Notes: a model not told the origin generated them from the sequence alone. 64,000 nt of DNA from Octopus bimaculoides (GCF_001194135.2 NC_068985.1:49126110-49190109); one strand, 5' to 3'; shown: positions 281 through 64,000, numbered from the stretch's first letter. Numbers and translations are program-made.

Positions 281-525
281 TACAGACCCCTGGACAGCAT
301 TGACCTCTGTCGGCCTACAACACGTAAGATAATCCGCCAAATGAACGACTGGATACCGTACGCCCATAAATCCACCGAGAACTAAATACTACACATTGCA
401 ACACTAAGCAGCGGAACGTTGCATTATTTGTACGACCCGAAGTGTAGAAGTACTGCAAGTATATGCTCTTCTAGCGTGTAGTCCCTACCATATAGTCACT
501 ATATACGGACGTGTAGTCTCTAGGT

Positions 526-1082
526 GTGGAGGTTGTGGAGGTGCAATGGCCCAGTGGTTAGGGCAGCGGACTCACAGTCATAAATAAATAAGATAGCAGC
601 TGCTGAAACATCTTTGATCTGCTTGGTTAGTGCAGACCTTAAGTAACACAATAACAAACTAATGGTAGTTTGTGTTTATATACTAACAATGTTAGTGGAG
701 GTGCAATGGCCCAGTGGTTAGGGTAACAGACTTGCGGTCATAGGACTGCGGTTTCGATTCCCAGACCGGGTGTTGTGAGTGTTTATTGAGCGAAAACACC
801 TAAAGCTCCACGAGGTTCCGGCGGGGGATGGTGGCGAACCCTGCTGTACTCTTTCACCACAACTTTCTCTCACTCTTACTTCTTGTTTCTGTTGTGCCTG
901 TAATTCAAAGGGTCAGCCTTGTCACACTGTGTCACGCTGAATATCCCCGAGAACTACGTTAAGGGTACACGTGTCTGTGGAGTGCTCAGCCACTTGCACG
1001 TTAATTTCACGAGCAGGCTGTTCCGTTGATCGGATCAACTGGAACCCTCTACCGTCGTAAGCGACGGAGTGCCAACAACAAC
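526..1082 (+). mobile_element. Composite SINE-A insertion: 5' stutter + truncated head (536-582) + 114-bp captured segment (581-694) + full SINE-A (696-1082)
   Basis: The 11-bp direct repeat agtctctaggt at 515-525 and 1083-1093 brackets the whole unit. tRNA-like head TGGAGG(C/T)GCAATGGCCCAGTGGTTAG with GGTTTCGATTCC B-box; (AAC)n tail. Confidence 0.85.
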
Positions 1083-2779
1083 AGTCTCTAGGTTTTCGTA
1101 ATAGCGACAAATATGACAGATAAGACGTGTAATGTAGAGCGATCGGTACACGCGACTTGTTATTCTGTAGCTGTAACTGCTGTGGCTTAGTCCCAAGTCG
1201 ACCCAGATTGAATAAGCCTATGATCAAAAATTGTTTCAGCGATGACCATTCTTTTATTTTACGTAATCTAGTTTATCTTTCTTTTACGTAACCCAGTGCA
1301 TCTTTCTTATACGTAATCCAGTATATCTTTCTTCGTTTAAAGTAATAGGACAAAGACTCCAAACGGTACATGGTGCTGCACTAAAGTGTCACAAAGGGTA
1401 TCTAAAAGTATGGCAGATTTTTTTCTGAATATAATTAAAGACTTTAGGAAAATTCACACTAATTCCTGAGTACCTTGAAAAAATACATTATTGGTAATTT
1501 TGTTATACGCAAGTATGATTGCTAATACATGGTTAGCAATAGTTTTCTATATTTTTTATTAACTTTAAATAATTTTGGTTCAATATGAAGTAATTACAAA
1601 ATGGAAGACTAATTTTCGAAAACACAGAAATGTTAACTTCACTCAATAATGTATTAGTTGGTGTTGAAATTTTCGTCACACTATCTGCAACCTGGTCCAC
1701 TGTTGGCCAGTTTATACAGGTCTCCAGATCAGTTGCAGTGGGACTGCAACTGGTCAGTGACTGTGTCAGTAACAAAGCCGTTGATAGTGCCACGAAAATT
1801 TTGATACCAAGTCGTAAATAATTAAGGAAAGTTAACAGTTCCTATGTGTTTTATAATGGTTAGAATGTGTCTTCCACGCAGTAATTGTTTTAGTTTCAAC
1901 ACAGTCTCAGATCAAATTACTTGCCAAATAAATACAATCCCGAATTTCTATATAAAGAGTACCAGTCATGTTTTTTTGTTTTTCTTTTTGCTCTCTAGTT
2001 TGGCGGGAAGTCAAAAACATTGAGAACCCCTACTGTAAGGCTGTGGCCTAACTCTAGACAGTGTTTGGGACTAATAGTGAGGCTGTTACCTAGTTTTTTT
2101 TTTCCTATCCTTAGACCGGTGTTCTTGCGATATTGGAGTTAACTGTTGTTGTTGTTGTTCTTGTTGCTATCTGATGTTATTGCTGTTGTTGCTCTTCTTG
2201 CTACCGTTGTGTGTTTCGTTTTGTTGTTTATATTGCTTTTATTGGTGCTGCCGCTGCTGCTGCTGCTGCTGCTGCTGTTACTGCTGCCGTTACTGCTGCT
2301 GTCATTGTTGTTGTTGTTGGTGGTGGTGATGGTGGTGGTGATGGTGGTAGCGGCGGCAGCGGCGGTGGTGGTGGTGGTGGGGNNNNNNNNNNNNNNNNNN
2401 NNNNNNNNNNNNNNNNNNNNNNNNNNNNNNNNNNNNNNNNNNNNNNNNNNNNNNNNNNNNNNNNNNNNNNNNNNNNNNNNNNNNNNNNNNNNNNNNNNNN
2501 NNNNNNNNNNNNNNNNNNNNNNNNNNNNNNNNNNNNNNNNNNNNNNNNNNNNNNNNNNNNNNNNNNNNNNNNNNNNNNNNNNNNNNNNNNNNNNNNNNNN
2601 NNNNNNNNNNNNNNNNNNNNNNNNNNNNNNNNNNNNNNNNNNNNNNNNNNNNNNNNNNNNNNNNNNNNNNNNNNNNNNNNNNNNNNNNNNNNNNNNNNNN
2701 NNNNNNNNNNNNNNNNNNNNNNNNNNNNNNNNNNNNNNNNNNNNNNNNNNNNNNTTCTTTCTTTTGTTGTCCTTTCTAT

Positions 2780-2823
<44 letters not shown>

Positions 2824-4185
2824 GGATAAGATCGATATTTAAAATATTGATTTTATCAAGTGGCCAGCATGGGAATAAAAACCATCAAAGGTAATAATTA
2901 TTTAAAATTATAATATATATATAATGTCAACGACCACTCCTTATATCCAAGATCCATGGTCCACATTACAAATGAATATTGCTGCATGATAAAGGGTTAC
3001 AGTATCGTAAGGGGTACCCATTTCTCCGTATCATTATCGTCACTGTGAAGAGAGAACGTTCCAGCGGCAAAGGTAACGGATCCACATTCCCGCTTCTTTC
3101 TCTCAGTAAGACTGGACAGATGAAAATCATAACTCTCAGAAACTGAAACCACCTAAAAGCTGACCACTACAGTTGTTTGTTTGTTTGGTGTGTGTATGAG
3201 TTTATATGTGTATGCGCGCACGCGTCCGTGTGCGTGTGTGTTATATGTGCGTGTGTACGTGTTTGTTTATGTGTGTGTGTACGTGTGTGTGTGTGTGTGT
3301 GTGTGTAAGTGTGTACATGTGTATGTACTCCTCAAGCATTTGCTCTTCCTGGATTCCTTCAGAACACTGCTGACGGTGAAAACAGATTGGAGTCCTGTCG
3401 ACTCCTACCTTAGACTGATGTTCGAACAAGAACTTGTTTGCCCTCACTCACATGATGAGGGCGCAGAAGTGAAAGAAAAGGGAGAAAAGAGGGGAGGAGA
3501 AGGCGAAGGTGACTTGAGGTAATTGATGCTGATTTTTTTATACATAGTAGCACAAAGATAATCAATTGCGGGAAATTAAGAGAGAGTATATTGATTAAAT
3601 CAAAGATTTTATCGACCATCGGAACACCGGTTTGGGAATTACATTGAAGGGTTCAACATCCTTAAAGGTGTAATGTACAATAAATCAAAAATTTATACAT
3701 AACGCATCAAAATAATCAATGTAAAGATTCTGCAACAAATAATAAATTCTTTCTGTCAGCTACGATATTTTAACAGCGCGAACTTCATTATCGAGAAAAA
3801 TTTTTAAGGGAAATAATTCTGGAATAAAGGATGAGAGTTACTTCCCTTGGATGTGCAGGTGAGCATTATTCAATCTAAAAATATACCGCCTATCCACTAC
3901 CAACACACAGCTCGCGCTCGCACACACTGTTGTTTTCGCACACACCTATGTATTCGTACACACATACTCGCGCGCCTACTCACACCAAGATAATCTAAGT
4001 TACTAAGAATTTATAAGATTAAGTTTATCTTTTCTAGCAAACGTATATCTGTTATAATATACATATAAACACACTTTTATATATTATCTTGCGTATATCT
4101 CTTTCCTCTATTTGCAAAAGTATAATATATGTACGTATGTATGTATGTATGTATGTATGTATGTATGTATGTATGTATGTATGTG

Positions 4186-4547
4186 TGGAGGCGCAATGGC
4201 CCAGTGGTTAGGGCAGCGGACTCGCAGTCATAGGATCGCGGTTTCGATTACCAGACCGGGCGTTGTGAGTGTCTATTGAGCGAAAACACCTAAAGCTCCA
4301 CGAGGCTCCAGCAGTGGATTGTGGCGAACCCTGATGTACCCTTTCACCACAACTTTCTCTCACTCTTACTTCCTGTTTCTGTTGTGCCTGTAATTCAAAG
4401 GGTCAGCCTTGTCACACTGTGTCACACTGAATATCCCCGAGAACTACGTTAAGGGTACACGTGTCTGTGGAGTGCTCAGCCACTTGCACGTTAATTTCAC
4501 GAGCAGGCTGTTCTGGTGATCGGATCAAGCGACGGAGTGCCAACAAC
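4186..4547 (+). mobile_element. SINE-A (tRNA-derived, (AAC)n tail) within (TATG)n
   Basis: Aligns end to end with the copies at 696, 6552, 19911 and 44102. Small deletion near the tail. Confidence 0.95.
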
Positions 4548-4559
4548 ATGTATGTATGT

Positions 4560-6510
4560 ATGTTCTTTTTCTCTTTTTAATTTAGTATATATTTTGACCA
4601 GCGATCTACTTGGTAGCAAATTTGTGAACGAAAGCATCTTGTTTTAACCGTCATCGTTTAAATCTTAAGAAGGTACTGCAGCTCGGATATTGTGATCATT
4701 TGTAGCATATGAATTAAGAATTTGCATTCTCTCCCCAAGATACCAAATTCAGCCATACTTTTCCCCAGACGGGTTGGTATGCATCTGCTGCTCCAATAAT
4801 AATAGGTATGAAACTGAAAGGCTATTCTGAGTACTGGATTTGCAAACACCTTATCAATGGTCCATAGATGTCCTTTTTCTCTTGCATTTTTCTAAGACCA
4901 TTCATGCCCAGAGAGCAACTGATTTCCACAACGGAACACATCTTTTCTTTGTGGCCCCACACATAGATATCTGGCAGGCTGTGTTTTAACTTGGTGGCTG
5001 TTTCAATTTTCGAGTTCCACCAATATTTTTTGACCAATCGGTCTCAATATTGTCGCTTTGTCTGTAAGTGTTTTCTTTTTTTGTTATCCTGTTCCAGGCC
5101 GTTATGGCTACGGTATCATACCTCCTGGGAAGATAATACAATATCTAGAAGACATTCTCTCACAGCTGGCAATAATATGGTTGGTGTCTTCAGTCTTAGT
5201 CTTGCACAGCCTACATTTATTTTCTGTCAACGTTTCCTGCATTTTATATAAGTACTTGCCGGGGATCTCTTGTTATTGAATTGCACGGACGTAGCCTTCA
5301 AAGCGGGATGTCATAAACTTATCGGTATTCTATGTATGTATTTATGTATGTATGTATGTATGTGTGGAGGCGCAATGGCCCAGTGGTTAGGGCAGCGGAC
5401 TCGCAGTCATAGGATCGCGGTTTCGATTACCAGACCGGGCGTTGTGAGTGTTTCTTGAGCGAAAACACCTAAAGCTCCACGAGGCTCCAGCAGGGGATTG
5501 TGGCGAACCCTGATGTACCCTTTCACCACAACTTTCTCTCACTCTTACTTCCTGTTTCTGTTGTGCCTGTAATTCAAAGGGTCAGCCTTGTCACACTGTG
5601 TCACACTGAATATCCCCGAGAACTACGTTAAGGGTACATGATCAATCCTTTTTTCGGTTTGAATTTTACCTTCTATGTACTTGGTACTCAGTCCATTTAT
5701 TTTATTTTACTGTTCTGATAAATAGATTTTACCAATGTTCTTTAGGGAGAGATCTGTATCAGCACTTTTTTCATACCACTCCTCAAGTTCATAAGCTATC
5801 CTAATTATGTTGTTGATTTTATGGTCACAAAGTCGCATGAGCAGCTTGCGAGTTCGAACGTCTATCCCACTGAGCTCTTGTAGTGACCAGTTCAGAAGGC
5901 CAAACGTGGGCGTCAGGACAGGCACTGCAAAGGTGTTGGGGGTAATATGCTAATTGTAAGCTGAGAGTTCTGATGACTGTATTCCCTTTACTCTCCTGAG
6001 GTATTCATTCCAATCCCCCTCCTTATTTCTTTATTGTCAAGCCGTTCATTTTTAGAGTTTCAGAAGAGGGCACATTTTTTTCTACGTTTTATTGTCAGAA
6101 ACGCACATTTGAACTCACAAAATTTCATCCCAATGTCTGTAGAAAATTGGATAATGAGGTCCAATTGCTTTTTTATATGGTTGATATTTCGCTCACACAG
6201 TCTCAGGTCGTCGGCAAGGAAAAATTGAGAGATACTTCTGGATCCATTTGTATGGTCACTATGTTTTCTGATTAGGTATGATAGTGAGTTTAATGAGAGG
6301 GTGAATGGTAGCACCGACAGACTATCACTCTGAAAGATGTCTTTTTTGATAGTGAATGCTATCCAACTCAATTTTCTGCTTATCACTCCTAAGGAACAAA
6401 GTGGTGTACCAAGTCTTGGTTAGGCTTTTGGTAGTACTCACAAGTAGTTGTGGGACTTTGGTTAACTGTAAAAGCTTCATAATCCATCCATGTGGTATAT
6501 CAAAAGCTTT
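4560..6510 (-). mobile_element. Decayed 5'-truncated non-LTR retrotransposon, RLE type (R4/Dong-like): RT, CCHC knuckle, restriction-like endonuclease
   Basis: Minus-strand translations: KAFDIPHGWI (RT), DIFQSDSLSVLPF and FFLADDLRL (degenerate GIFQGDSLSP and YxDD), DIGMKF..KC, VPVLTPTFG..W...EL..IDVRTRKLL, KCRLCKTKTEDTNHIIASC (CCHC), LPDIYVW..VVEISC..EKKDIY (PD..D/E endonuclease). Multiple stops and frameshifts. Confidence 0.85.
5365..5638 (+). mobile_element. 3'-truncated SINE-A copy with upstream (TATG)n, interrupting the LINE
   Basis: Nearly identical to 4186-4459 including private variants. Ends at gggtaca with no tail and no TSD. Confidence 0.9.
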
Positions 6511-6551
6511 CTGTCTGTCTGTCTGATGGATGGATGGATGGATGGATGTAT

Positions 6552-7193
6552 TGGAGGCGCAATGGCCCAGTGGTTAGGGCAGCGGACTCGCGGGCATAGG
6601 ATCGCGGTTTCGATTACCAGACCGGGCGTTGTGAGTGTTTATTGAGCGAAAACACCTAAAGCCCCACGAGGCTCCGGCAGGGGATGGTGGCGAACCCTGC
6701 TGTACTCTTTCACCACAACTTTCTCTCACTCTTACTTCTTGTTTCTGTTGTGCCTGTAATTCAAAGAGTCAGCCTTGTCACACTGTGTCACGCTGAATAT
6801 CCCCAAGAACTNNNNNNNNNNNNNNNNNNNNNNNNNNNNNNNNNNNNNNNNNNNNNNNNNNNNNNNNNNNNNNNNNNNNNNNNNNNNNNNNNNNNNNNNN
6901 NNNNNNNNNNNNNNNNNNNNNNNNNNNNNNNNNNNNNNNNNNNNNNNNNNNNNNNNNNNNNNNNNNNNNNNNNNNNNNNNNNNNNNNNNNNNNNNNNNNN
7001 NNNNNNNNNNNNNNNNNNNNNNNNNNNNNNNNNNNNNNNNNNNNNNNNNNNNNNNNNNNNNNNNNNNNNNNNNNNNNNNNTGTCTGTGGAGTGCTCAGCC
7101 ACTTGCACGTTAATTTCACGAGCAGGCTGTACCGTTGATCGGATTGACTGGAACCCTCGACGTCGTAAGCGACGGAGTGCCAACAACAACAAC
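6552..7193 (+). mobile_element. SINE-A spanning an assembly gap
   Basis: Head at 6552, body to 6811, resumes at 7081 and runs to the (AAC)n tail. Confidence 0.9.
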
Positions 7194-7345
7194 ATGTATG
7201 TATTACGTATGTATGTATTACGTATGTATGTATTATGTATGTATGTATTACGTATGTATGTATTACGTATGTATGTATTACGTATGTATGTATTATGTAT
7301 GTATGTATTACGTATGTATGTATTACGTATGTATGTATGTATGTC
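7194..7345. repeat. 15-bp minisatellite ATGTATGTATTA(C/T)GT x ~9
   Basis: Direct tandem units. They produce the MYVLR repeats in the ORF track. Confidence 0.95.
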
Positions 7346-7888
7346 ATTGTACGGTTTTATTTCAAGATTTCTTGCCAATAGAGAAAGAGCTGGTTTCTAA
7401 CCTGGATCCAAGTTCCTTCATTGGCATTTCAACAACAATATGTATGTATGTATATAAAATGATGGAGTTATTCGATACTCCCGACCCACATTTCATCTTA
7501 GTTGATCTCTAAGTGAGATTAGCGACACTGATAGTCACCTCATTACAAAGTTTGCCTCCTTAAACGTCTAGACAAAAACATATCCTGAGTACATTAACTG
7601 AACTTTCAGTCCTATTACAAACGTTAGCTAGAATTAGCTTCTCATTCAGGCACTAACTTGCGTGTACAACGACTACTCCTAGCTAATGCATGAATTTATT
7701 ACTATCCTGGACAGACCATTGTTACCTAGAGATCTTGACATTTTTAAAACAACGCTGACACAATATCATATAAATTCCAATGAACCGGTGAAGAGCCAAA
7801 GCTTGCATTCTTAAATGCTAGTTTGTTTGATTTTTTTTTTTTTTTGATTTTTTTGTTTTGTTTTGTTTCTTTTTGTATTTTGTTTTTT

Positions 7889-19685: not shown

Positions 19686-20392
19686 GAGGAGGAGACCCCC
19701 TTCGGTCATGAATAACCATAGGATTGCACTTAGAAAGTTGCCCTCCGAGGCACAAATCCGGGCAAGGTTGTTTGTGGATGGCCAGCAGTCGCCCATGCAT
19801 ACCAGCCTTCCCTCTCCACGCCACTGATGTTATCCAAGGGAAATCAAAGGGGCCGATACAGCTTGGCTGCCAGTGATGTCGCAACTCATTTCTACAGCTG
19901 AGTTAACTGGTTGTTGTTGGCACTCCGTCGCTTACGACGTCGAGGGTTTCAGTTGATCCGATCAACGGAACAGCCTGCTCGTGAAATTAACGTGCAAGTG
20001 GCTACAGACACGTGTACCCTTAACGTAGTTCTCGGGGATATTCAGCGTAACACAGTGTGACAAGGCTGACCCTTTGAATTACAGGCACAACAGAAACAGG
20101 AATTAAGAGTGAGAGAAAGTTGTGGTGAAAGAGTACAGCAGGGTTCGCCACCATACCCTGCCGGAACCTCGTGGAGCTTTAGGTGTTTTCGCTCAATAAA
20201 CACTTACAATGCCCAGTCTGGGAATCGAAATCGCGAGTCCGCTGCCCTAACCACTGGGCCATTGCGCCTCCACTGAGTTAACTGGAGCAACGTGAAATAA
20301 AGTGTCTTGCTCAAGAACACAACACGCAGCCCGGTCCGGGAATCGAACTCACAACTTCACGATCGTAAGCTCGACGCTCTAACCACTGAGCC
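19686..20392 (-). mobile_element. SINE-C inserted in the Merlin transposase, itself split by SINE-A
   Basis: Joining 19686-19910 and 20286-20392 reconstructs the intact copy at 27112-27441. Confidence 0.9.
19911..20272 (-). mobile_element. SINE-A with 13-bp TSD
   Basis: ctgagttaactgg at 19898-19910 and 20273-20285. Confidence 0.95.
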
Positions 20393-28460: not shown

Positions 28461-28830
28461 CAGGGTGGCCACAAAGTCATGCACCATGGGAGATGTCAAG
28501 CATGGTTTATTAGCAATGAAGTAGATAATCCATTACAAATGTTGCAGGTTATAAGGATGAAATAGTTCCGATTTGAGGATTTTCTGCATTGCTGAACAAG
28601 GAACATTAAGTTCTTGAGATGACCTACAGACTTTGTTGGACTGGCTACCACTTTTGCTAAAACAACTTCTCTCACATCATCAGTTATGGCAGGCTGCCCT
28701 GAATGATTATCATCCATAACACTGCTTGTTCTTTTAAACATATTCAGGAGTCTGATGACAGAATGACTTAATCGAGAACTGGGATGCCATCTGCTGAATT
28801 TTTCTACTACTTGTTGCATAGACCATTTTT
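28461..28830 (-). mobile_element. Tc1/mariner-superfamily transposase remnant (N-terminal HTH region) with one terminus
   Basis: CAGGGTGGCC terminus; peptide VIRLLNMFKRTSSVMDDNHSGQP..V..SPTKS resembles the KF..TGSV.D..RSGRP motif. Confidence 0.65.
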
Positions 28831-33139: not shown

Positions 33140-33803
33140 TATCCTCCTCCATGTTTAACAGTTGGAAGAAGGCAGTCTAGATCAAATGCTTCTTTTGGCT
33201 GTCCCTACATGTATACTTGGCACGTGATCGGAAATATGGTAAAGATGACTCGTCTGAGAAAACAACATTCTTCCACTGCTCTAGGGACCAATTCTGTAGG
33301 TTTTTACTCCAGTCTAGACGCTTTGCAATGTTTGTTTTTGAAAGCAGTGGTTTTCTGATTGCAGCCCTCCTGTGAAAGCCGGCTTTGTGCAGCTCCCTGT
33401 GAACAGTTTTTGTGGAAACTGAGTTCTCAAAGTGGTCATTAAGCTCTGCAGTAATTTTTGGAGCTGTACTTTTGGGATCCTTTCTAACAATTCGCATAAA
33501 AGTCCGACAGTCCCTATCTGAAAGTTTTGGTTCCTAACATTTCGGCTGTTTTCATTATGCTAGCACCTGCCATGTGAGCACCAACAATTTGACCTCTTTG
33601 AAAGTCCAATAGATTTGTCATTTTAAGGAATTTTAATTACCTTTTTTCTGATGATATCTGAAAAGAAACAGCAATTTTAGCAAAACATATTAAGCAACAC
33701 AAGTAATTAATCAAAAATCATAAAAATAAACAAGCTTTTGATGGTTTTATAGACATTTCAAAATTATGATGCTAGGTGTTTCCATTATTTTGTCCAACCC
33801 CTA
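33140..33803 (-). mobile_element. Tc1-like transposon, 5' half
   Basis: ORF 33177..33497 (TAPKITAEL..VSTKTVHREL..G..RKPLL..RL.W..W..VVFSDES); TIR GGTGTTTCCATTATTTTGTCCAACCCCT at ~33776-33802. Confidence 0.9.
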
Positions 33804-43964: not shown

Positions 43965-44586
43965 CCCTTTAACATTCAAATGACTCAGTCAAGTGTGAAG
44001 CTTATTTAATCACATGGTTTTGAATTAATCATGCTTTGTCTCATAACTTAAAGATTTTGATAATGTGATTGTTTATTCTTAGAGGGATATTGTTAGGTAA
44101 GTGGAGGCGCAATGGCCCAGTGGTTAGGGCAGCGGACTCGCGGTCACAGGATCGCAGTTTCGATTCCCAGACCGGGCGTTGTGAGTGTTTATTGAGCGAA
44201 AACACCTAAAGCTCCACGAGGCTCCGGCAGGGGATGGTGGCGAACCCTGCTGTACTCTTTCACCACAACTTTCTCTCACTCTTTCTTCCTGTTTCTGTTG
44301 TGCCTGTAATTCAAAGGGTCAGCCTTGTCACACTGTGTCACGCTGAATATCCCCGAGAACTACGTTAAAGGTACATGTGTCTGTGGAGTGCTCAGCCATT
44401 TGCACGTTAATTTCACGAGCAGGCTGTTCCGTTGATTGGATCAACTGGAACCCTCGACGTCGTAAGCAACGGAGTGCCAACAACAACAACATTGTTGGGT
44501 AAGTGTGAGAGGCTGGATCTGGTCAGTTTGAACGTAAAGCAGGTAGAATATTTGGAGCAGGTATGGCCAGTTTAAGCGCTAATGGG
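43965..44586. mobile_element. piggyBac-type MITE (TTAA TSD) hosting a SINE-A
   Basis: TTAA|CCCTTTAACATT ... GCGCTAATGGG|TTAA; TTAA at 43961-64 and 44587-90. Confidence 0.8.
44102..44490 (+). mobile_element. Full-length young SINE-A with 13-15-bp TSD
   Basis: attgttaggtaag (44089-44101) / attgttgggtaag (44491-44503). Confidence 0.95.
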
Positions 44587-54221: not shown

Positions 54222-54316
54222 ATTGTCCTAATCAATGGCTGAAATATGGTGAATCCTGTTACAATTTCATCATGAATTCACCGAAAACCATTGACATGGC
54301 TAAAGAAGAATGTAGT
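54222..54316 (+). CDS. Cont: Contactin-like, coding exon 2 (C-type lectin domain start)
   Basis: ctctcttctag| ... |gtaagt; (D)CPNQWLKYGESCYNFIMNSPKTIDMAKEECS is a classic CP..W....SCY......C start; phases 1->0. Confidence 0.93.
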
Positions 54317-56765: not shown

Positions 56766-58420
56766 ATAGGCTCGAAATGTAAAAGACTTTTTCATTTTTC
56801 CCAAGCGCCAAACTAATACACTTGCTTGTTGTTCTTACACCTGTCTTCATCTTTTGTTTTGCTATAAATTTCAACTATTTATATATATATGTATATATAT
56901 ATATATAAAAAATTACTTCTCCCAACATAATCATATTTTGTATATGTTTTCTACTCAATTTACTAGTACTTTAATGTTTTGCAGTAACAATCTTCAGGTG
57001 AACAACATTTATCGTAGCATCGGTAAAAAGAAATAGCTGTTGCAGCTCCTCCTCCCACCCTACCCACATCAAGCTCTCCATCCCCTACTCCCAATTCCTC
57101 TGTCTGTGCAGGCTCTGCAGTGACAACAATGACTTTGAGATTCAACTCGTGCCTTGCCACTTCATCCTTCGTGGATATCCCTTCACCACTATCTACACCG
57201 CCCTTGCCAGAGCACGTTCCATATACTGTGCCTTTGCTCTCTCTCCCTGCACCTGCCTACCATTACCCGTCTCCCGTTTCCCTTCACCTACCACTCCTCC
57301 ACCCCGCCAATGCACCATTCCTCAAGCCTTCTGTCGACTCCAGTCTGACCCCTCCACTTTGCACATCTTCCCCAACTTACCCCTTCCCTCCTTCAAACAA
57401 GCCCACAACCTACGTGACCTCCTGGTCCACAGTTTCTTCCCTAACCCCACCTCCCAACCTGGCTCGTTCCCCTGCTTCTGCCCATGCTGCTGCACTTGCC
57501 CCTACCTCTCCAACACCACCATCCTCAGGCACCTATCATTGTCCTTATCATATCACTGACTCCTTTACCTACTCTTCTAGCAACGTCATTTACTGCATCT
57601 CCTGCTCTTTCTGTTCTGTGTACATCAGTCAAACAAGACGCTGCTTGGCTGACTGGTTCGCGGAGCACCTCCGAGACATTAGATTCAGCAATGACACCCC
57701 AGTCTCACACCATTTCCACCCTACTGGTCATTCATTACAACACCTGTCTGTGTTCGGATTGTCTTTGCATGGAGGTCATCCGGACTCCTGCCTTTGCCAT
57801 GAACAGGAATTAATCTTCTTTCTTTGTTTCTTTGCACCATATGGACTCAACTCCCCTCCCCTCTTCATCTGACTCCCCTCATCTCCTCTCTTCATCTGTC
57901 ATCTACTTCTTCTCTTCACTCCTACCCACCTTCTCCCTTCATCAATACCCCCTCCATCCACATCTCATTCCTACATACCCCAACCCTACCCCCACATCCT
58001 CACCCCCAACCCACACCCACACCCTCACATCTCCACACCCCAACACCACCATACCACCCCGCATAAATTAGCACTGACCACTTCTCAGCACCCACACCGT
58101 TACCTACACATTACAGACTTACGTACACATCTACAAATGCACACGCGCCTTCGTTCTGGGATCTCCAACACTTTATTATCTCCCCTTCCTAGCTCTCCTG
58201 TATAACTACCTTTGTCCAGCCAGTCACCATGATTGACCGCTAGCTCCAAAAGTTTTTTATTCTCTCTCTGTTTATTTCCTCTTGTTCATTTCTGTTGAAG
58301 AGCGTAGACTCGAAAAAAGACTTTCTCATCTTCCCGAGCATCAAATTAAAACACCTGCTTGTTGTTTATACACCTGTCTTCATCTTTTGTTTTTCTGTAA
58401 ATTTCAACTAATATATATAT
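56766..58420 (+). mobile_element. Penelope-like element: upstream pLTR fragment, RT C-terminus, GIY-YIG endonuclease, 3' UTR/pLTR
   Basis: HPTHIKLSIPYSQFL.L.RLCS (RT end); ITDSFTYSSSNVIYCISCSFCSVYISQTRRCLADWFAEHLRDI..PVSHHF..GHS..E.ELIF.L..FAPYGLN (GIY-YIG). 56766-56880 repeats 58305-58420. Confidence 0.9.
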
Positions 58421-58495: not shown

Positions 58496-58644
58496 ATTTA
58501 CCTGGTACACAAGTGGTGAATACCTAGGAAACAATAAATTCCGTTGGATCGGAGATGGACAAGATATAAACAACAAAGAAATGTTTTGGGTAAATGATGC
58601 TGTGAAAAACAGTACAGGAAGATTTATTACTTATATTTATCATG
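58496..58644 (+). CDS. Cont: Contactin-like, coding exon 4
   Basis: ctttcttctgtttag| (G)FTWYTSGEYLGNNKFRWIGDGQDINNKEMFWVNDAVKNSTGRFITYIYH G|gtgagt; phases 2->1; WxG- and F.W.DG-like lectin motifs. Confidence 0.9.
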
Positions 58645-59537
58645 GTGAGTATTAAACATTTATTGTGTGTGTGTTAATGAATTCATTTATTGGACTACAT
58701 CCATGCTGGGACACCACTTTTAGTCAGTCATATTATCTGCTGTCTTTATTCTTACTGGAACATATTTTAGTAAATTCTATTTCATTAAGTTTCATATTTA
58801 ACATAAAAGACACAAAGGTTTACATTGGTAAAGGTAAACACACATGCAATACACTCAGAAACACATACATCCCCGCACTCCATCATTATCATCGTAATGA
58901 CATCTTGAGCAAGTGTCTTCCACTGTAGATCCAAGCCTGTCCATGCTTTATGAGTGGATCTGGCAGATGGAAACTGAAAGAAGCCTGTTGTACATATTTG
59001 TATGTATATATGTATGTGTGTGAGTGTATGCATTTGTGTGTACCCTTGTCTAGACACCACATGATGTTTGTAACTAAGCATTATCATCATACAATTGAGG
59101 TTGTTCGTTTCCAGTCTTTCACTTAAAAAATGCCTGGGCATCAGGAAAAATTACCTACCTTGCTTGGAGACAAGTGAGGGTTGGTGACAGAAAGGGTACC
59201 TGGTTCTAGAAAATTTACTTCAAATTCTATCTAAACCAGGCAACTAATGAAAAGTTGATGTTAAATGATGGTGATGTTATGTATAAAATTACTGTCTCTA
59301 TTAATACGATTAAATGACCCTTTAAACATTCTAGACTTTACAGGAAGTCTGAAAAATCACAGCTGGAAATATAAATGTTATGGAAGATATTTTTATGGCA
59401 TTCTTTTGCATTTTGTTAACATTGTTGGTATATAAACACAAACTACCATTAGTTTGTTATTGTGTAACTCAAGGTCTGCACTAACCAAGCAGATCAAAAA
59501 TGCTTCAGCAGCTGCTATCTTATTCATTTATTTTTAA

Positions 59538-60300
59538 CTAGCTGAATTACCCGGCGTTGCCCAGGTTACTGCTGTTTTTATTCAGATTAGTAAACAATAA
59601 ATATGAAGATATATTTGTTTTCTCATTATTATTTCAAAATCTCTATATTTATTAAAAAATATCCAAATTGTAGTGATAATAGAATTTAGAACTGCAAATC
59701 TGTCATTCTTGAGGCACCTCAGGGTAAATGATATTCATTGTGTAATTTTTTTGTTGGTGTCCAAATGAATAAATTGTTGCTGCTTCTAACTTGTGAGCAA
59801 TCAGCATAGAATTGGCCATGGGAGAGGCATGTAGTAGAGAGATGATGTCCAACTACCTTGAAGGATTGACTGGAAACTGAAGCATCTTAAAATTCAAATG
59901 GAAAATCTGTAGGTATGAGAGGAAATTTTAGAATAAAGACATTTTCTTCTTTGTGACTACCTGTTATGATTGTTGCCTGTAGGACATAAGGTTTCATATA
60001 AGTAACAATTAAGCCTGTTCCATTACATAGGTGAGATTAGTCAAGATTCCTAATCAACATAATGGGAGCATCCAGCTTTAGTGTCAAGTTATGTGGTAGC
60101 ATCCCAGTGGGTTTAAGTGTGTTCAGAAATTCAACAGGGTATTGAACTGCCTGATCTTGATCAACTATTGTGTGAATTGATGGAAAGGTCTTTTCTGATG
60201 TGTCTGTTAACTTTTGAAGAAGTTCATGATTGAGTTTATCAACCATTTCATTAGTTGGAGCCAGTATAGCTCTTTCACATAGCCAGTTTACATCAGTCTA
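59538..60300 (-). mobile_element. Helitron 3' fragment (PIF1 helicase C-terminus)
   Basis: WLCERAILAPTN, YPVEFLNTLKPTGMLPHNLTLKLDAPIMLIRNLD, LCNGT, FIPRIPLIP.DFPFEFK..QFPV, SHGQFY. The 3' end reads CTGGGCAACGCCGGG (hairpin)..CTAG|T on the minus strand. Confidence 0.9.
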
Positions 60301-61937: not shown

Positions 61938-62974
61938 GGTGTAGGAGCGGCTGTGTGGTAAGTAGCTTGCTTACCAACCACATGGCTCTGGGTTCAGTCA
62001 CACTGCATGGTACCTTGGGCAAGTGTCTTCTACTATAGCCTCGGGCTGACCAAAGCCTTGTGAGTGGATTTGGTAGACGGAAACTGAAAGAAGCCCGTCA
62101 TATATATATAAGTCAGTAAATGGTGGGGTTGTGTTAACCGCACATGGAGAAATAATAGGAAAATGAAAAATAATAATAAGGCAGAATGCTAAACTGAAAG
62201 CATATTTTAATATAGATGTGTAAAAAGGATTTCTAACCGGCTTCTATTGCATGGCAAATTTTCAAGAAGAGGGAGAATGANNNNNNNNNNNNNNNNNNNN
62301 NNNNNNNNNNNNNNNNNNNNNNNNNNNNNNNNNNNNNNNNNNNNNNNNNNNNNNNNNNNNNNNNNNNNNNNNNNNNNNNNNNNNNNNNNNNNNNNNNNNN
62401 NNNNNNNNNNNNNNNNNNNNNNNNNNNNNNNNNNNNNNNNNNNNNNNNNNNNNNNNNNNNNNNNNNNNNNNNNNNNNNNNNNNNNNNNNNNNNNNNNNNN
62501 NNNNNNNNNNNNNNNNNNNNNNNNNNNNNNNNNNNNNNNNNNNNNNNNNNNNNNNNNNNNNNNNNNNNNNNNNNNNNNNNNNNNNNNNNNNNNNNNNNNN
62601 NNNNNNNNNNNNNNNNNNNNNNNNNNNNNNNNNNNNNNNNNNNNNNNNNNNNNNNNNNNNNNNNNNNNNNNNNNNNNNNNNNNNNNNNNNNNNNNNNNNN
62701 NNNNNNNNNNNNNNNNNNNNNNNNNNNNNNNNNNNNNNNNNNNNNNNNNNNNNNNNNNNNNNNNNNNNNNNNNNNNNNNNNNNNNNNNNNNNNNNNNNNN
62801 TGGTATATTTATTTTTTTATATATTATTTTTTACTTTTTTGTAAAAAACATTTTCATTCTCCCTCTTCTTGAAAATTTGCCATGCAATGAAAGCCGGTTA
62901 GAAATCCTTTTTACACATCTATATTAAAATATGCTTTCAGTTTAGCATTCTGCCTTATTATTATTTTTCATTTT

Positions 62975-63015
<41 letters not shown>

Positions 63016-63281: not shown

Positions 63282-63389
63282 ATGGCAAATACAGTTGGAT
63301 CCGGGATGATGGGCAGACACTACGTTCTAGTATCTGTGAAATTCCTGAAAAAGAAAGCTACAGAATTTATAATCAACACAGAAACTTTG
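63282..63389 (+). CDS. Cont: Contactin-like, coding exon 5 (end of lectin domain and linker); gene continues beyond the window
   Basis: ttttcaag| (D)GKYSWIRDDGQTLRSSICEIPEKESYRIYNQHRNF G|gtaagt. The ICE motif closes the domain, and the R.F ending recalls the R.(F/Y).YG linker before the Ig domains of protostome contactins. Confidence 0.88.
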
Positions 63390-64000
63390 GTAAGTTGTAA
63401 TGACAATTGTATTATTGTTAGTTTGACTATGTTATTGTTTAGGTCTAGGTCTGCCCTTATCCAGCTGACTTTATGATCAAAGACCTAGGTGTATATTTAA
63501 GACTACATTATTCTATGTTACTTTCTTTAAGTCGGTACCTTGTATTCAGAGTTCCAATCCTGCAGAGAATAATTTTGTCTTTTGGGGGCCAAATGGACTG
63601 ACAGAAATGTTTGTATCTGAAGATATGCCTTGCAGGATTTATTACAGCTCTTTACATTCTGAGTTCAAATTCCTTTGTTGTCTGCATATGTTACAGATAT
63701 AGTCCATCACTCACCACCAAGCCCTTGAGTGCTTTTATCACTCCAGCCTGTTGCAAACATTTATGACAAGTCTACGGCTTGAGAGTACCATTCTCTTTCT
63801 CCCTCCTATCTATCTTAGAACTCCTGTAAAAGAGTTACTGGCAAATCCTTTCCTTCTTGACTGAAAGTTGAAAAATAAAAATCTATGATTTGCAACAGAT
63901 TTTAGCTGCTGTTTCTGTGAAGTTGCATGCTCTAATGTTTTGAGTGTTTGGTCATGATCCTGAACCATATAATAAGGGACATTGCCCTTAATCATATCTC

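What the first reader, a model, noticed from the sequence alone, without database searches (positions are those of the whole stretch)
515..1093. Composite SINE carries a 114-bp inverted copy of contactin-intron DNA from 59 kb away
Seen: one 11-bp TSD (agtctctaggt) brackets gtggaggtt + a truncated SINE-A head + 114 bp + a full SINE-A. The 114 bp (581-694) is the ungapped reverse complement of 59417-59530 with 6 mismatches (108/114). The head/insert junction has a 2-nt TA microhomology. Part of the segment resembles an old SINE tail, but its private deletion and unique flank are shared only by these two sites in the window. The donor strand has a T5 run (a Pol III terminator) that reads TCTTT in the copy. 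Inference: either the reverse transcriptase jumped templates repeatedly during insertion (SINE -> nearby antisense RNA or DNA of the same locus -> SINE head), or a Pol III read-through chimera was mobilised. Either would be SINE-mediated shuffling of host intron DNA, possibly reflecting physical proximity of the upstream region and the gene body.
Basis: partly seen in the sequence, partly recalled or inferred. Interest (0 to 1): 0.78.

Follow-up and report, generated by a model that had tools for sequence, protein, structure and literature searches.

The report
Chimeric SINE insertion with captured 115-bp filler
One retrotransposition event inserted a full SINE with an extra SINE head and a 115-bp foreign piece on its front; this is a known by-product of reverse transcriptase jumping between templates, and I could not test whether the piece came from the matching site 59 kb away.

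Summary
Window 580-694 is the ungapped reverse complement of 59417-59531 (109/115 including the shared A at 580; 108/114 as reported). It is flanked by a 48-nt SINE-A head (535-582) and a full SINE-A (695-1082). One exact 11-bp target-site duplication (515-525, 1083-1093) encloses everything.

Three segments (526, 535, 695) begin exactly at SINE nucleotide 1. That is the mark of reverse transcriptase running off the 5' end of an RNA and jumping to a new template.

The claim of host intron DNA shuffled by physical proximity is not shown. The decisive test is the genome-wide copy number of the 115-mer, and I could not run it. The 115-mer may therefore be a low- or mid-copy repeat whose nearness is chance.

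The matching site lies 6 nt beyond a Helitron 3' end, in an intron between two lectin-like exons. The gene's identity as contactin was not verified. Interest is modest: a new member of a known kind.

The parts
515..525 (+). 5' copy of the target-site duplication AGTCTCTAGGT
   Evidence: Exact 11-mer, present only here and at 1083-1093 in the window. Two other SINE-A copies have duplications of about 11-13 bp.
526..534 (+). gtggaggtt: SINE-A nt 1-8 plus one T. Equivalently, the first unit of an exact 9-bp tandem repeat TGTGGAGGT (525-533 and 534-542).
   Evidence: Read directly. It is either a last short template jump with one untemplated base, or a later slippage duplication; the sequence cannot tell these apart.
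535..582 (+). SINE-A head fragment, nt 1-48, with no B box and no tail
   Evidence: blastn 87.5% to the head of the full copy and alignment A1. It differs from the five-copy consensus at nt 8 and nt 40 only. It ends in the AUAG loop of an 8-bp hairpin in the predicted fold of the head.
580..694 (+). 115-nt foreign segment, the inverted copy of 59417-59531. Bases 580-582 (ATA) are shared with the SINE head as microhomology.
   Evidence: 108/114 ungapped, 115 nt at 95%. It contains the hairpin ACAAACTA-ATGG-TAGTTTGT.
695..1082 (+). Full-length SINE-A from nt 1 to the (AAC)n tail
   Evidence: Aligns end to end with the copies at 44101-44488, 4185-4548 and 20273-19910. It is 3.1% from the consensus (12/386, 11 transitions).
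1083..1093 (+). 3' copy of the target-site duplication AGTCTCTAGGT, followed by TTT so that it ends in a T4 run
59417..59531 (-). The only other copy of the 115-mer in the window; candidate source or sibling copy
   Evidence: It lies in the intron between the exon-like segments 58496-58644 and 63282-63389.
59538..60297 (-). 3' terminal remnant of a Helitron. The helicase C-terminus spans 60297 down to about 59722. The 3' end reads hairpin CCTGGG..CCGGG, 12 nt, CTAG at 59538-59541, then host T at 59537.
   Evidence: Pfam Pif1_2B_dom, E 5e-9, on 60040-60297 on the minus strand. The helicase-like frames continue to about 59722, and the hairpin folds at -13.3 kcal/mol. The terminus was read by eye against the canonical Helitron end (own knowledge). 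The 115-mer begins 6 nt beyond this end.
63429..63467 (+). Marginal older relative of the middle of the 115-mer (30/39 identical)
   Evidence: blastn E 4e-4 with 1/-1 scoring and nhmmer E 0.23. Local alignment score 21, reached by 7 of 400 dinucleotide shuffles.

Best explanation
A chimeric SINE retrocopy made in one LINE-driven, target-primed reverse transcription event.

**Order of events.**
1. The reverse transcriptase copied a SINE-A RNA from its (AAC)n tail to its very 5' end.
2. It jumped, without microhomology, onto a second template carrying the 115-nt sequence and copied it.
3. It jumped again, using a 3-nt ATA match in an exposed hairpin loop, onto a SINE-A RNA at nt 48 and ran off that RNA's 5' end.
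4. The cDNA was then joined to the upstream target end, leaving one 11-bp target-site duplication around the whole product.
5. The extra gtggaggtt is either one more short jump or a later 9-bp slippage duplication.

**Shown:** the anatomy, the single target-site duplication, the three starts at nt 1, and the direction of copying (into the composite).

**Inferred:** that the middle template was an RNA, and that it was an ordinary dispersed sequence. Under this reading the copy 59 kb away is a sibling rather than the necessary donor. The nearness is then chance, helped by the fact that a reader of 64-kb windows can only notice pairs that fall within one window.
For: - **One event.** A single exact 11-bp target-site duplication, found only at the two ends, matches in length those of other SINE-A copies.
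- **Starts at nt 1.** Three segments start exactly at SINE nt 1 (526, 535, 695), and the insert/SINE junction is blunt at nt 1. A DNA-level breakpoint would hit that base in about 1 of 400 positions; run-off at an RNA 5' end predicts it.
- **The head cannot stand alone.** It is a 5' fragment without tail or B box, so it cannot be an independent insertion.
- **The second jump.** It lands in the loop of a predicted 8-bp hairpin with ATA microhomology.
- **Ages agree.** The full SINE is 3.1% from its consensus. The insert is 5.3% from the other copy, mostly transitions, about twice the one-lineage value. The 115-mer was therefore copied at about the time of the SINE insertion.
- **Direction of copying.** The homology ends exactly at the two SINE junctions. 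That is automatic if the composite is the copy and a double coincidence if it were the source.
- **Precedent.** Tripartite chimeras flanked by one target-site duplication and explained by double template jumps are documented (PMC2104539). Template switching is the accepted route of module exchange in mollusc SINEs (PMC4758252).
- **For the sibling reading.** A unique donor would fall within 59 kb by chance with probability of about 5e-5 in a genome of gigabase size (inference). The other copy lies 6 nt from a Helitron end in repeat-rich DNA. A marginal third relative lies in the same intron.
Against: - No other good copy of the 115-mer is in the 64-kb window, so any family must be far rarer than SINE-A (6 copies) or the second SINE family (more than 15 hits).
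- The 115-mer matches no Rfam family, no tRNA and no SINE-B profile.
- There is no direct evidence that it is transcribed, or that it is repeated elsewhere.
- The insert does not end in a poly(A) or U tract, so the jump did not go to the 3' end of a finished Pol II or Pol III transcript.
Confidence: 0.5

Rival explanations
1. One reading: the same one-event chimera, but the middle template really was the locus 59 kb away. It would be either a nascent antisense transcript (antisense to the lectin-exon gene, same sense as the Helitron remnant) or exposed single-stranded DNA of that locus. The retrotransposition complex would have reached it because the two sites are close in the nucleus.
For: - It is the only other copy in the window, and it lies in cis at 59 kb.
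- The 5.3% divergence is what a direct donor-copy pair of the age of this SINE would show.
- The flanks of the other copy have no further matches in the window.
- All the evidence for a one-event chimera applies here as well.
Against: - Uniqueness was never tested genome-wide.
- The scan can only see pairs inside one window, which strongly favours chance pairs of repeats.
- No such proximity coupling is documented for LINE or SINE template jumps in the papers I read.
- There is an AATAAA right at the start of the 115-mer on that strand. A Helitron-sense Pol II transcript using it would end before most of the segment.
Confidence: 0.22
2. A rearrangement at DNA level after an ordinary SINE-A insertion. 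Replication template switching (FoSTeS/MMBIR) or break repair with templated filler would have duplicated the first 48 nt of the SINE and copied 115 nt from the nearby locus in inverted orientation.
For: - The template is nearby, in cis and inverted, and one junction has 3-nt microhomology. These are typical of replication-based template switching (own knowledge).
- The exact 9-bp tandem duplication at 525-542 shows that DNA-level slippage may have acted here.
Against: - The return junction is blunt and falls exactly at SINE nt 1, and the duplicated head also starts at nt 1. A DNA-level event has no reason to do either.
- The two heads differ at 6 of 48 positions, against 5.3% for the insert pair. 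That is somewhat more than a tandem duplication of the same age predicts, although the head is rich in CpG.
Confidence: 0.1
3. Retrotransposition of an RNA that was already chimeric. It could be a read-through or Pol III transcript of a master locus with the head-insert-SINE order, or RNA fragments joined by an RNA ligase before reverse transcription, as shown for U6/L1 chimeras.
For: - The composite has no T4 run between 535 and 1082, so it could be transcribed as one unit.
- All three SINE starts share T at nt 8, where six other copies have C. That fits one source or subfamily.
- The head ends in a hairpin loop, a plausible RNase cut site.
- RNA ligation before retrotransposition is documented for U6/L1 (PMC6789731, abstract).
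Against: - The head fragment lacks the B box, so Pol III initiation 160 nt upstream of the full SINE is unlikely.
- A master locus only moves the question of how the chimera arose.
- No second head-insert-SINE copy is in the window.
- Ligation of three RNAs in the right order is less economical than jumps by one enzyme.
Confidence: 0.1
4. An assembly artefact in a gapped short-read assembly.
For: - The window has 11 runs of N, totalling 3,486 N.
- SINE-A is highly repeated, and repeats are where assemblers misjoin.
Against: - The 11-bp target-site duplication ties the far-left flank to the far-right flank.
- The insert differs from the other copy at 6 positions, so the same reads were not used twice.
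- Both junction sequences are unique and must exist in reads.
Confidence: 0.04

Closest known systems
Bipartite and tripartite chimeric retrocopies made by LINE reverse-transcriptase template switching (Buzdin and co-workers; Gogvadze et al. 2007, PMC2104539)
   Same: Copies of different templates are fused head to tail in one orientation. The 3' part carries the retroelement tail, and one target-site duplication of 11-16 bp surrounds the whole. More than one jump occurs in a single event.
   Different: The 3' part here is a complete SINE, so the first jump came after run-off, not in mid-template. A SINE is used twice. The middle part is not a known small RNA, SINE or LINE, and it is not a full copy ending at its own 3' end.
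End-to-end template jumping by the R2 reverse transcriptase in vitro (Bibillo and Eickbush; from my own knowledge, not read here)
   Same: The jump occurs when the enzyme reaches the 5' end of the RNA, needs no homology, and sometimes adds an untemplated base. This fits the blunt junction at nt 1 and the extra T at 534.
   Different: That is an in vitro property of one LINE clade. The LINE partner of this SINE was not identified here.
U6/L1 chimeras formed by RNA ligation before retrotransposition (Moldovan et al. 2019, PMC6789731), and the L1 chimera census of Law and Burns 2025 (PMC11838501)
   Same: A foreign RNA is joined to the 5' side of a retroelement inside one target-site duplication.
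   Different: Those partners are abundant small RNAs or mRNAs. Nothing here points to a ligase rather than jumps.
Module exchange in mollusc SINEs ('jigsaw' SINEs; Matetovici et al. 2016, PMC4758252)
   Same: Same phylum, and the same proposed mechanism for adding new 5' modules to SINEs.
   Different: That work concerns families that went on to amplify. This is a single copy with no sign of descendants in the window.
Replication-based template switching (FoSTeS/MMBIR) and templated insertions at repaired breaks (own knowledge)
   Same: A short inverted copy of a nearby in-cis sequence, with microhomology at one junction.
   Different: Both SINE-side breakpoints sit exactly at SINE nt 1, and the whole lies within a retrotransposition target-site duplication.

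Membership tests
LINE-mediated chimeric retrocopy (template-switch type) | The whole chimera is flanked by one target-site duplication of the length usual for the element | tested here: met
   Exact 11-bp AGTCTCTAGGT at 515-525 and 1083-1093 only. Other SINE-A copies have 11-13 bp.
LINE-mediated chimeric retrocopy (template-switch type) | The 3' part ends in the retroelement's own tail | tested here: met
   The full SINE-A ends in GCCAACAACAAC, like the copies at 44488 and 19910.
LINE-mediated chimeric retrocopy (template-switch type) | The parts are fused directly in the same orientation, with breakpoints that make sense for RNA templates (5' run-off or a mid-template switch) | tested here: met
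   Three segments start at SINE nt 1. One junction is blunt and one has ATA microhomology.
LINE-mediated chimeric retrocopy (template-switch type) | Every part is a copy of a cellular or retroelement transcript | not testable with these tools
   The SINE parts qualify. It matches no Rfam family or tRNA.
   Within the window only two copies exist. Genome-wide searches were impossible or blind: with failed positive controls.
   No orthologous locus could be fetched.
Replication-based template switching (FoSTeS/MMBIR) | Microhomology at each switch, with breakpoints unrelated to element ends | tested here: not met
   One junction is blunt, and both SINE-side breakpoints are at nt 1.
Helitron gene capture or 3' end bypass | The captured DNA is carried between Helitron termini | tested here: not met
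   The other copy lies 6 nt outside a Helitron 3' end. The composite holds no Helitron sequence.
tRNA-derived SINE (for the element called SINE-A) | A tRNA-like head with A and B boxes, a body and a LINE-type tail; dispersed copies with target-site duplications | tested here: inconclusive
   Six dispersed copies, target-site duplications and the (AAC)n tail are shown. An A box TGGCCCAGTGG and a B-box-like GGTTTCGATTCC can be read by eye. However, ARAGORN and Rfam give no tRNA match.

The most novel reading that the evidence does not exclude
The 115 nt were copied from the locus 59 kb away itself, as nascent antisense RNA or exposed single-stranded DNA, because the retrotransposition complex samples templates that are physically close to its integration site. 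Fillers at SINE 5' junctions would then record three-dimensional genome contacts in the germ line, and would be a route for moving intron DNA over short range.
Probability: 0.2. Interest if true: 0.65.

Novelty: new member of a known kind. Interest (0 to 1): 0.3.

Why it matters
As it stands this is a clean invertebrate example of a multi-jump chimeric retrocopy. It shows that the LINE machinery that moves this cephalopod-type SINE runs off RNA 5' ends and re-primes on other templates. That process is thought to build new SINE modules. The finding would matter more only if the 115-mer proved to be single-copy. A donor 59 kb away in cis would then be very unlikely by chance, and would point to template choice governed by nuclear proximity. 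That idea could be tested genome-wide with thousands of SINE 5' junctions.

Tried and rejected
1. **Read depth and junction support.** No run ids were guessed.
2. **Copy number through the protein collection.** The open frames of the 115-mer gave no hit. The control with the SINE-A 3' ORF plus flank also gave none. A SINE-A ORF found only 6 representative clusters, at most 67% identical to the query. Four come from Logan contigs and one is an Octopus vulgaris hypothetical protein; the sixth was not looked up. The collection barely detects even the commonest SINE of this window, so the negative result says nothing.
3. **Metagenome scans.** The 115-mer hairpin gave 0 matches and the SINE-A head control gave 0. 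The collection holds no such DNA.
4. **Orthologous loci.**
   - The lectin-like exons found no protein.
   - Three window ORFs near either site are not on record.
5. **Is the 115-mer a decayed copy of the window's second SINE family?** By eye there are short shared strings, but a nine-copy profile HMM does not reach either copy. Rejected.
6. **Is it a tRNA or a known RNA?** ARAGORN and Rfam are negative.
7. **Is the composite the source and the 59-kb copy derived from it?** Rejected, because the homology would then have to stop at both SINE junctions by coincidence.
8. **Did the Helitron carry the segment?** Rejected. There is no Helitron sequence in the composite, and the Helitron-end motif occurs once in the window.
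9. **Gene identity as contactin.** Only weak C-type-lectin-like signals were found. Left unverified.

Full report
**What is in the sequence**

Window 581-694 is the ungapped reverse complement of 59417-59530 with 6 mismatches, five of them transitions. The match extends one base further, to 580/59531, giving 115 nt at 95%. No other good copy exists in the 64 kb by blastn at word size 7, by blastn with 1/-1 scoring, or by nhmmer --max.

It starts GTGGAGGCGCAATGGCCC and ends in (AAC)n. It has six copies in the window: 695-1082, 44101-44488, 4185-4548, 5364-5638, 6552-7191 (across a gap) and 20273-19910.

The composite reads, from left to right:
- AGTCTCTAGGT (515-525)
- gtggaggtt (526-534)
- SINE-A nt 1-48 (535-582)
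- the 115-mer (580-694, sharing ATA with the head)
- the full SINE-A (695-1082)
- AGTCTCTAGGT (1083-1093)

The 11-mer occurs exactly only at these two places. Its length matches the target-site duplications of the copies at 44101 and 20273.

**Corrections to the finding**
- The microhomology is ATA (3 nt), not TA.
- The 3' target-site duplication is at 1083-1093.
- The 9-mer, together with the last T of the duplication, forms an exact tandem repeat of TGTGGAGGT (525-533 and 534-542).
- The stated resemblance to an old SINE tail is not borne out. A profile of nine copies of the window's second SINE family finds more than 20 places in the window but neither copy of the 115-mer.
- The only other possible relative is a 30/39 match at 63429-63467, which 7 of 400 dinucleotide shuffles equal.

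**What the anatomy says about mechanism**

Three separate segments begin exactly at SINE nucleotide 1 (526, 535, 695). The junction between the 115-mer and the full SINE is blunt at that base. A 5' fragment of a SINE has no tail, so it cannot have inserted by itself. The full SINE has no target-site duplication of its own. One duplication encloses everything, so the whole was inserted at once.

Run-off of the reverse transcriptase at the 5' end of an RNA, followed by a jump to a new template, predicts junctions at nt 1. A DNA-level breakpoint would land on that base only about once in 400 positions.

The second jump landed at nt 48. In the predicted fold of the head, this lies in the AUAG loop of an 8-bp hairpin, where the ATA microhomology could pair.

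The homology with 59417-59531 stops exactly at the two SINE junctions. The composite is therefore the copy and not the source.

The full SINE is 3.1% from the five-copy consensus (12/386, 11 transitions). The 115-mer pair differs by 5.3%, about twice the one-lineage value. The 115 nt were therefore copied at about the time the SINE inserted.

All three SINE starts carry T at nt 8, where the six other copies have C. This fits SINE RNAs from one source or subfamily. Independent CpG decay cannot be excluded.

**Comparison with what is known**

This is the architecture of chimeric retrocopies ascribed to template switching by LINE reverse transcriptases. These include tripartite ones flanked by one 14-16 bp direct repeat in a fungus and in the mouse (Gogvadze et al. 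2007, PMC2104539). Template switching is also the accepted explanation for module exchange among mollusc SINEs (PMC4758252). An alternative route, RNA ligation before reverse transcription, is documented for U6/L1 chimeras (PMC6789731). A recent census found L1 chimeras with small RNAs, Alu and mRNA fragments (PMC11838501). The composite is thus a new example of a known kind.

It differs in three details. The 3' part is a complete SINE. The SINE is used twice. The middle part is not a recognisable small RNA or retroelement.

**Where the 115 nt came from**

This is the part of the claim that would be interesting, and I could not test it.
- The protein collection gave no hit for the open frames of the 115-mer. 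It also gave none for a SINE-A ORF with its flank. Only six representative clusters were found for another SINE-A ORF, one of them an Octopus vulgaris hypothetical protein. The negative result therefore carries no weight.
- The metagenome collection holds neither the 115-mer nor the SINE-A head.
- No orthologous locus could be fetched.

What remains is argument. A unique donor would lie within 59 kb of a random insertion with probability of about 5e-5 in a gigabase genome. So either the choice of template was guided by proximity, or the 115-mer has many copies and one happens to be near. The second option is favoured by the scan design, because a reader of 64-kb windows can only notice pairs that fall inside one window.

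The second option is also favoured by the surroundings of the other copy. On the minus strand, 60297-60040 encodes a Pif1 2B helicase domain (Pfam E 5e-9). The helicase-like frames continue to about 59722. About 180 bp further on, the sequence reads as a short GC hairpin, 12 nt, CTAG, then T. This is the canonical Helitron 3' end (read by eye). The 115-mer begins 6 nt beyond it. The other copy therefore sits in transposon-rich intron DNA, not in evidently unique sequence.

Against a large family, the window holds no further good copy. Any family must therefore be much rarer than the two SINE families here.

I put the sibling-repeat reading at about 0.5 and the true local donor at about 0.2. 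The remainder is divided among a later DNA-level rearrangement, a pre-formed chimeric RNA and an assembly error.

**Gene context**

Three exon-like segments on the + strand have AG/GT borders: 54222-54316, 58496-58644 and 63282-63389. The second and third join in frame. Their translation has C-type-lectin-like motifs. It scores only weakly: Pfam UL45 lectin-like E 6e-4 and 0.03, and PDB CLEC4D E 0.005. The other copy of the 115-mer lies in the intron between the second and third segments. 'Intron' is supported; 'contactin' is not verified.

**Verdict**

The claim that host intron DNA was shuffled through physical proximity is untested, and on present evidence it is the less likely reading. Interest is modest (0.3). 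A single genome-wide BLAST of the 115-mer would settle the matter.

Noticed in passing
window 59538-60297 (minus strand): 3' terminal remnant of a Helitron. It has a Pif1 2B helicase domain (Pfam E 5e-9), a decayed helicase C-terminus reaching about 59722, then a GC hairpin, 12 nt and CTAG|T. Upstream of 60297 it is cut off by CA-rich simple sequence and an N gap.
   Followed up: partly
window 4152-4459 and 5331-5638: Two SINE-A copies are 98.7% identical over 308 bp, including 33 bp of the upstream (ATGT)n. This looks like a local segmental duplication rather than two insertions. A third copy at 6512-6811 is 92-94% identical over the same span.
   Followed up: partly
window 7194-7353: A 15-bp minisatellite (ATGTATGTATTACGT)n follows directly on the (AAC)n tail of a SINE-A copy. 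Several SINE-A copies are embedded in (ATGT)n, so SINE ends appear to be associated with microsatellites.
   Followed up: no
window 54222-54316, 58496-58644, 63282-63389 (+): Three exon-like segments with AG/GT borders and C-type-lectin-like motifs. The second and third join in frame; the first and second do not, so an exon in between is probably missing. No protein in the large collection shares words with the first two, which were the ones searched.
   Followed up: partly
window 57120-57872 (+): A 250-aa open frame rich in Pro, Ser and Thr. By eye its C-terminal part resembles a GIY-YIG nuclease of Penelope-like elements. Pfam gave no match at E<=0.1.
   Followed up: partly
window 33177-33497 (-) and 28496-28819 (-): Tc1/mariner transposase fragments. 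The first matches Pfam HTH_Tnp_Tc3_2 (E 2e-19); the second has no Pfam match.
   Followed up: partly
window 6060-6386 (-): A weak reverse-transcriptase fragment (RVT_1, E 0.017, below the cut-off) lies between SINE-A copies. It may be a LINE remnant. Its 3' end abuts the truncated SINE-A at 5638 and shows no (AAC)n tail.
   Followed up: no
window 62155-62280 and 62854-62979: A 126-nt inverted repeat, 98% complementary, flanks the N gap 62281-62800. It could be a real hairpin-forming repeat or an assembly artefact at the gap.
   Followed up: no
window 20245-20273 / 19910-20240 (-): This SINE-A copy has internal deletions: about 14 nt after nt 41, and 9 nt near nt 300. It keeps a clean 11-12 bp target-site duplication, CAGTTAACTCA(G).
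   Followed up: no
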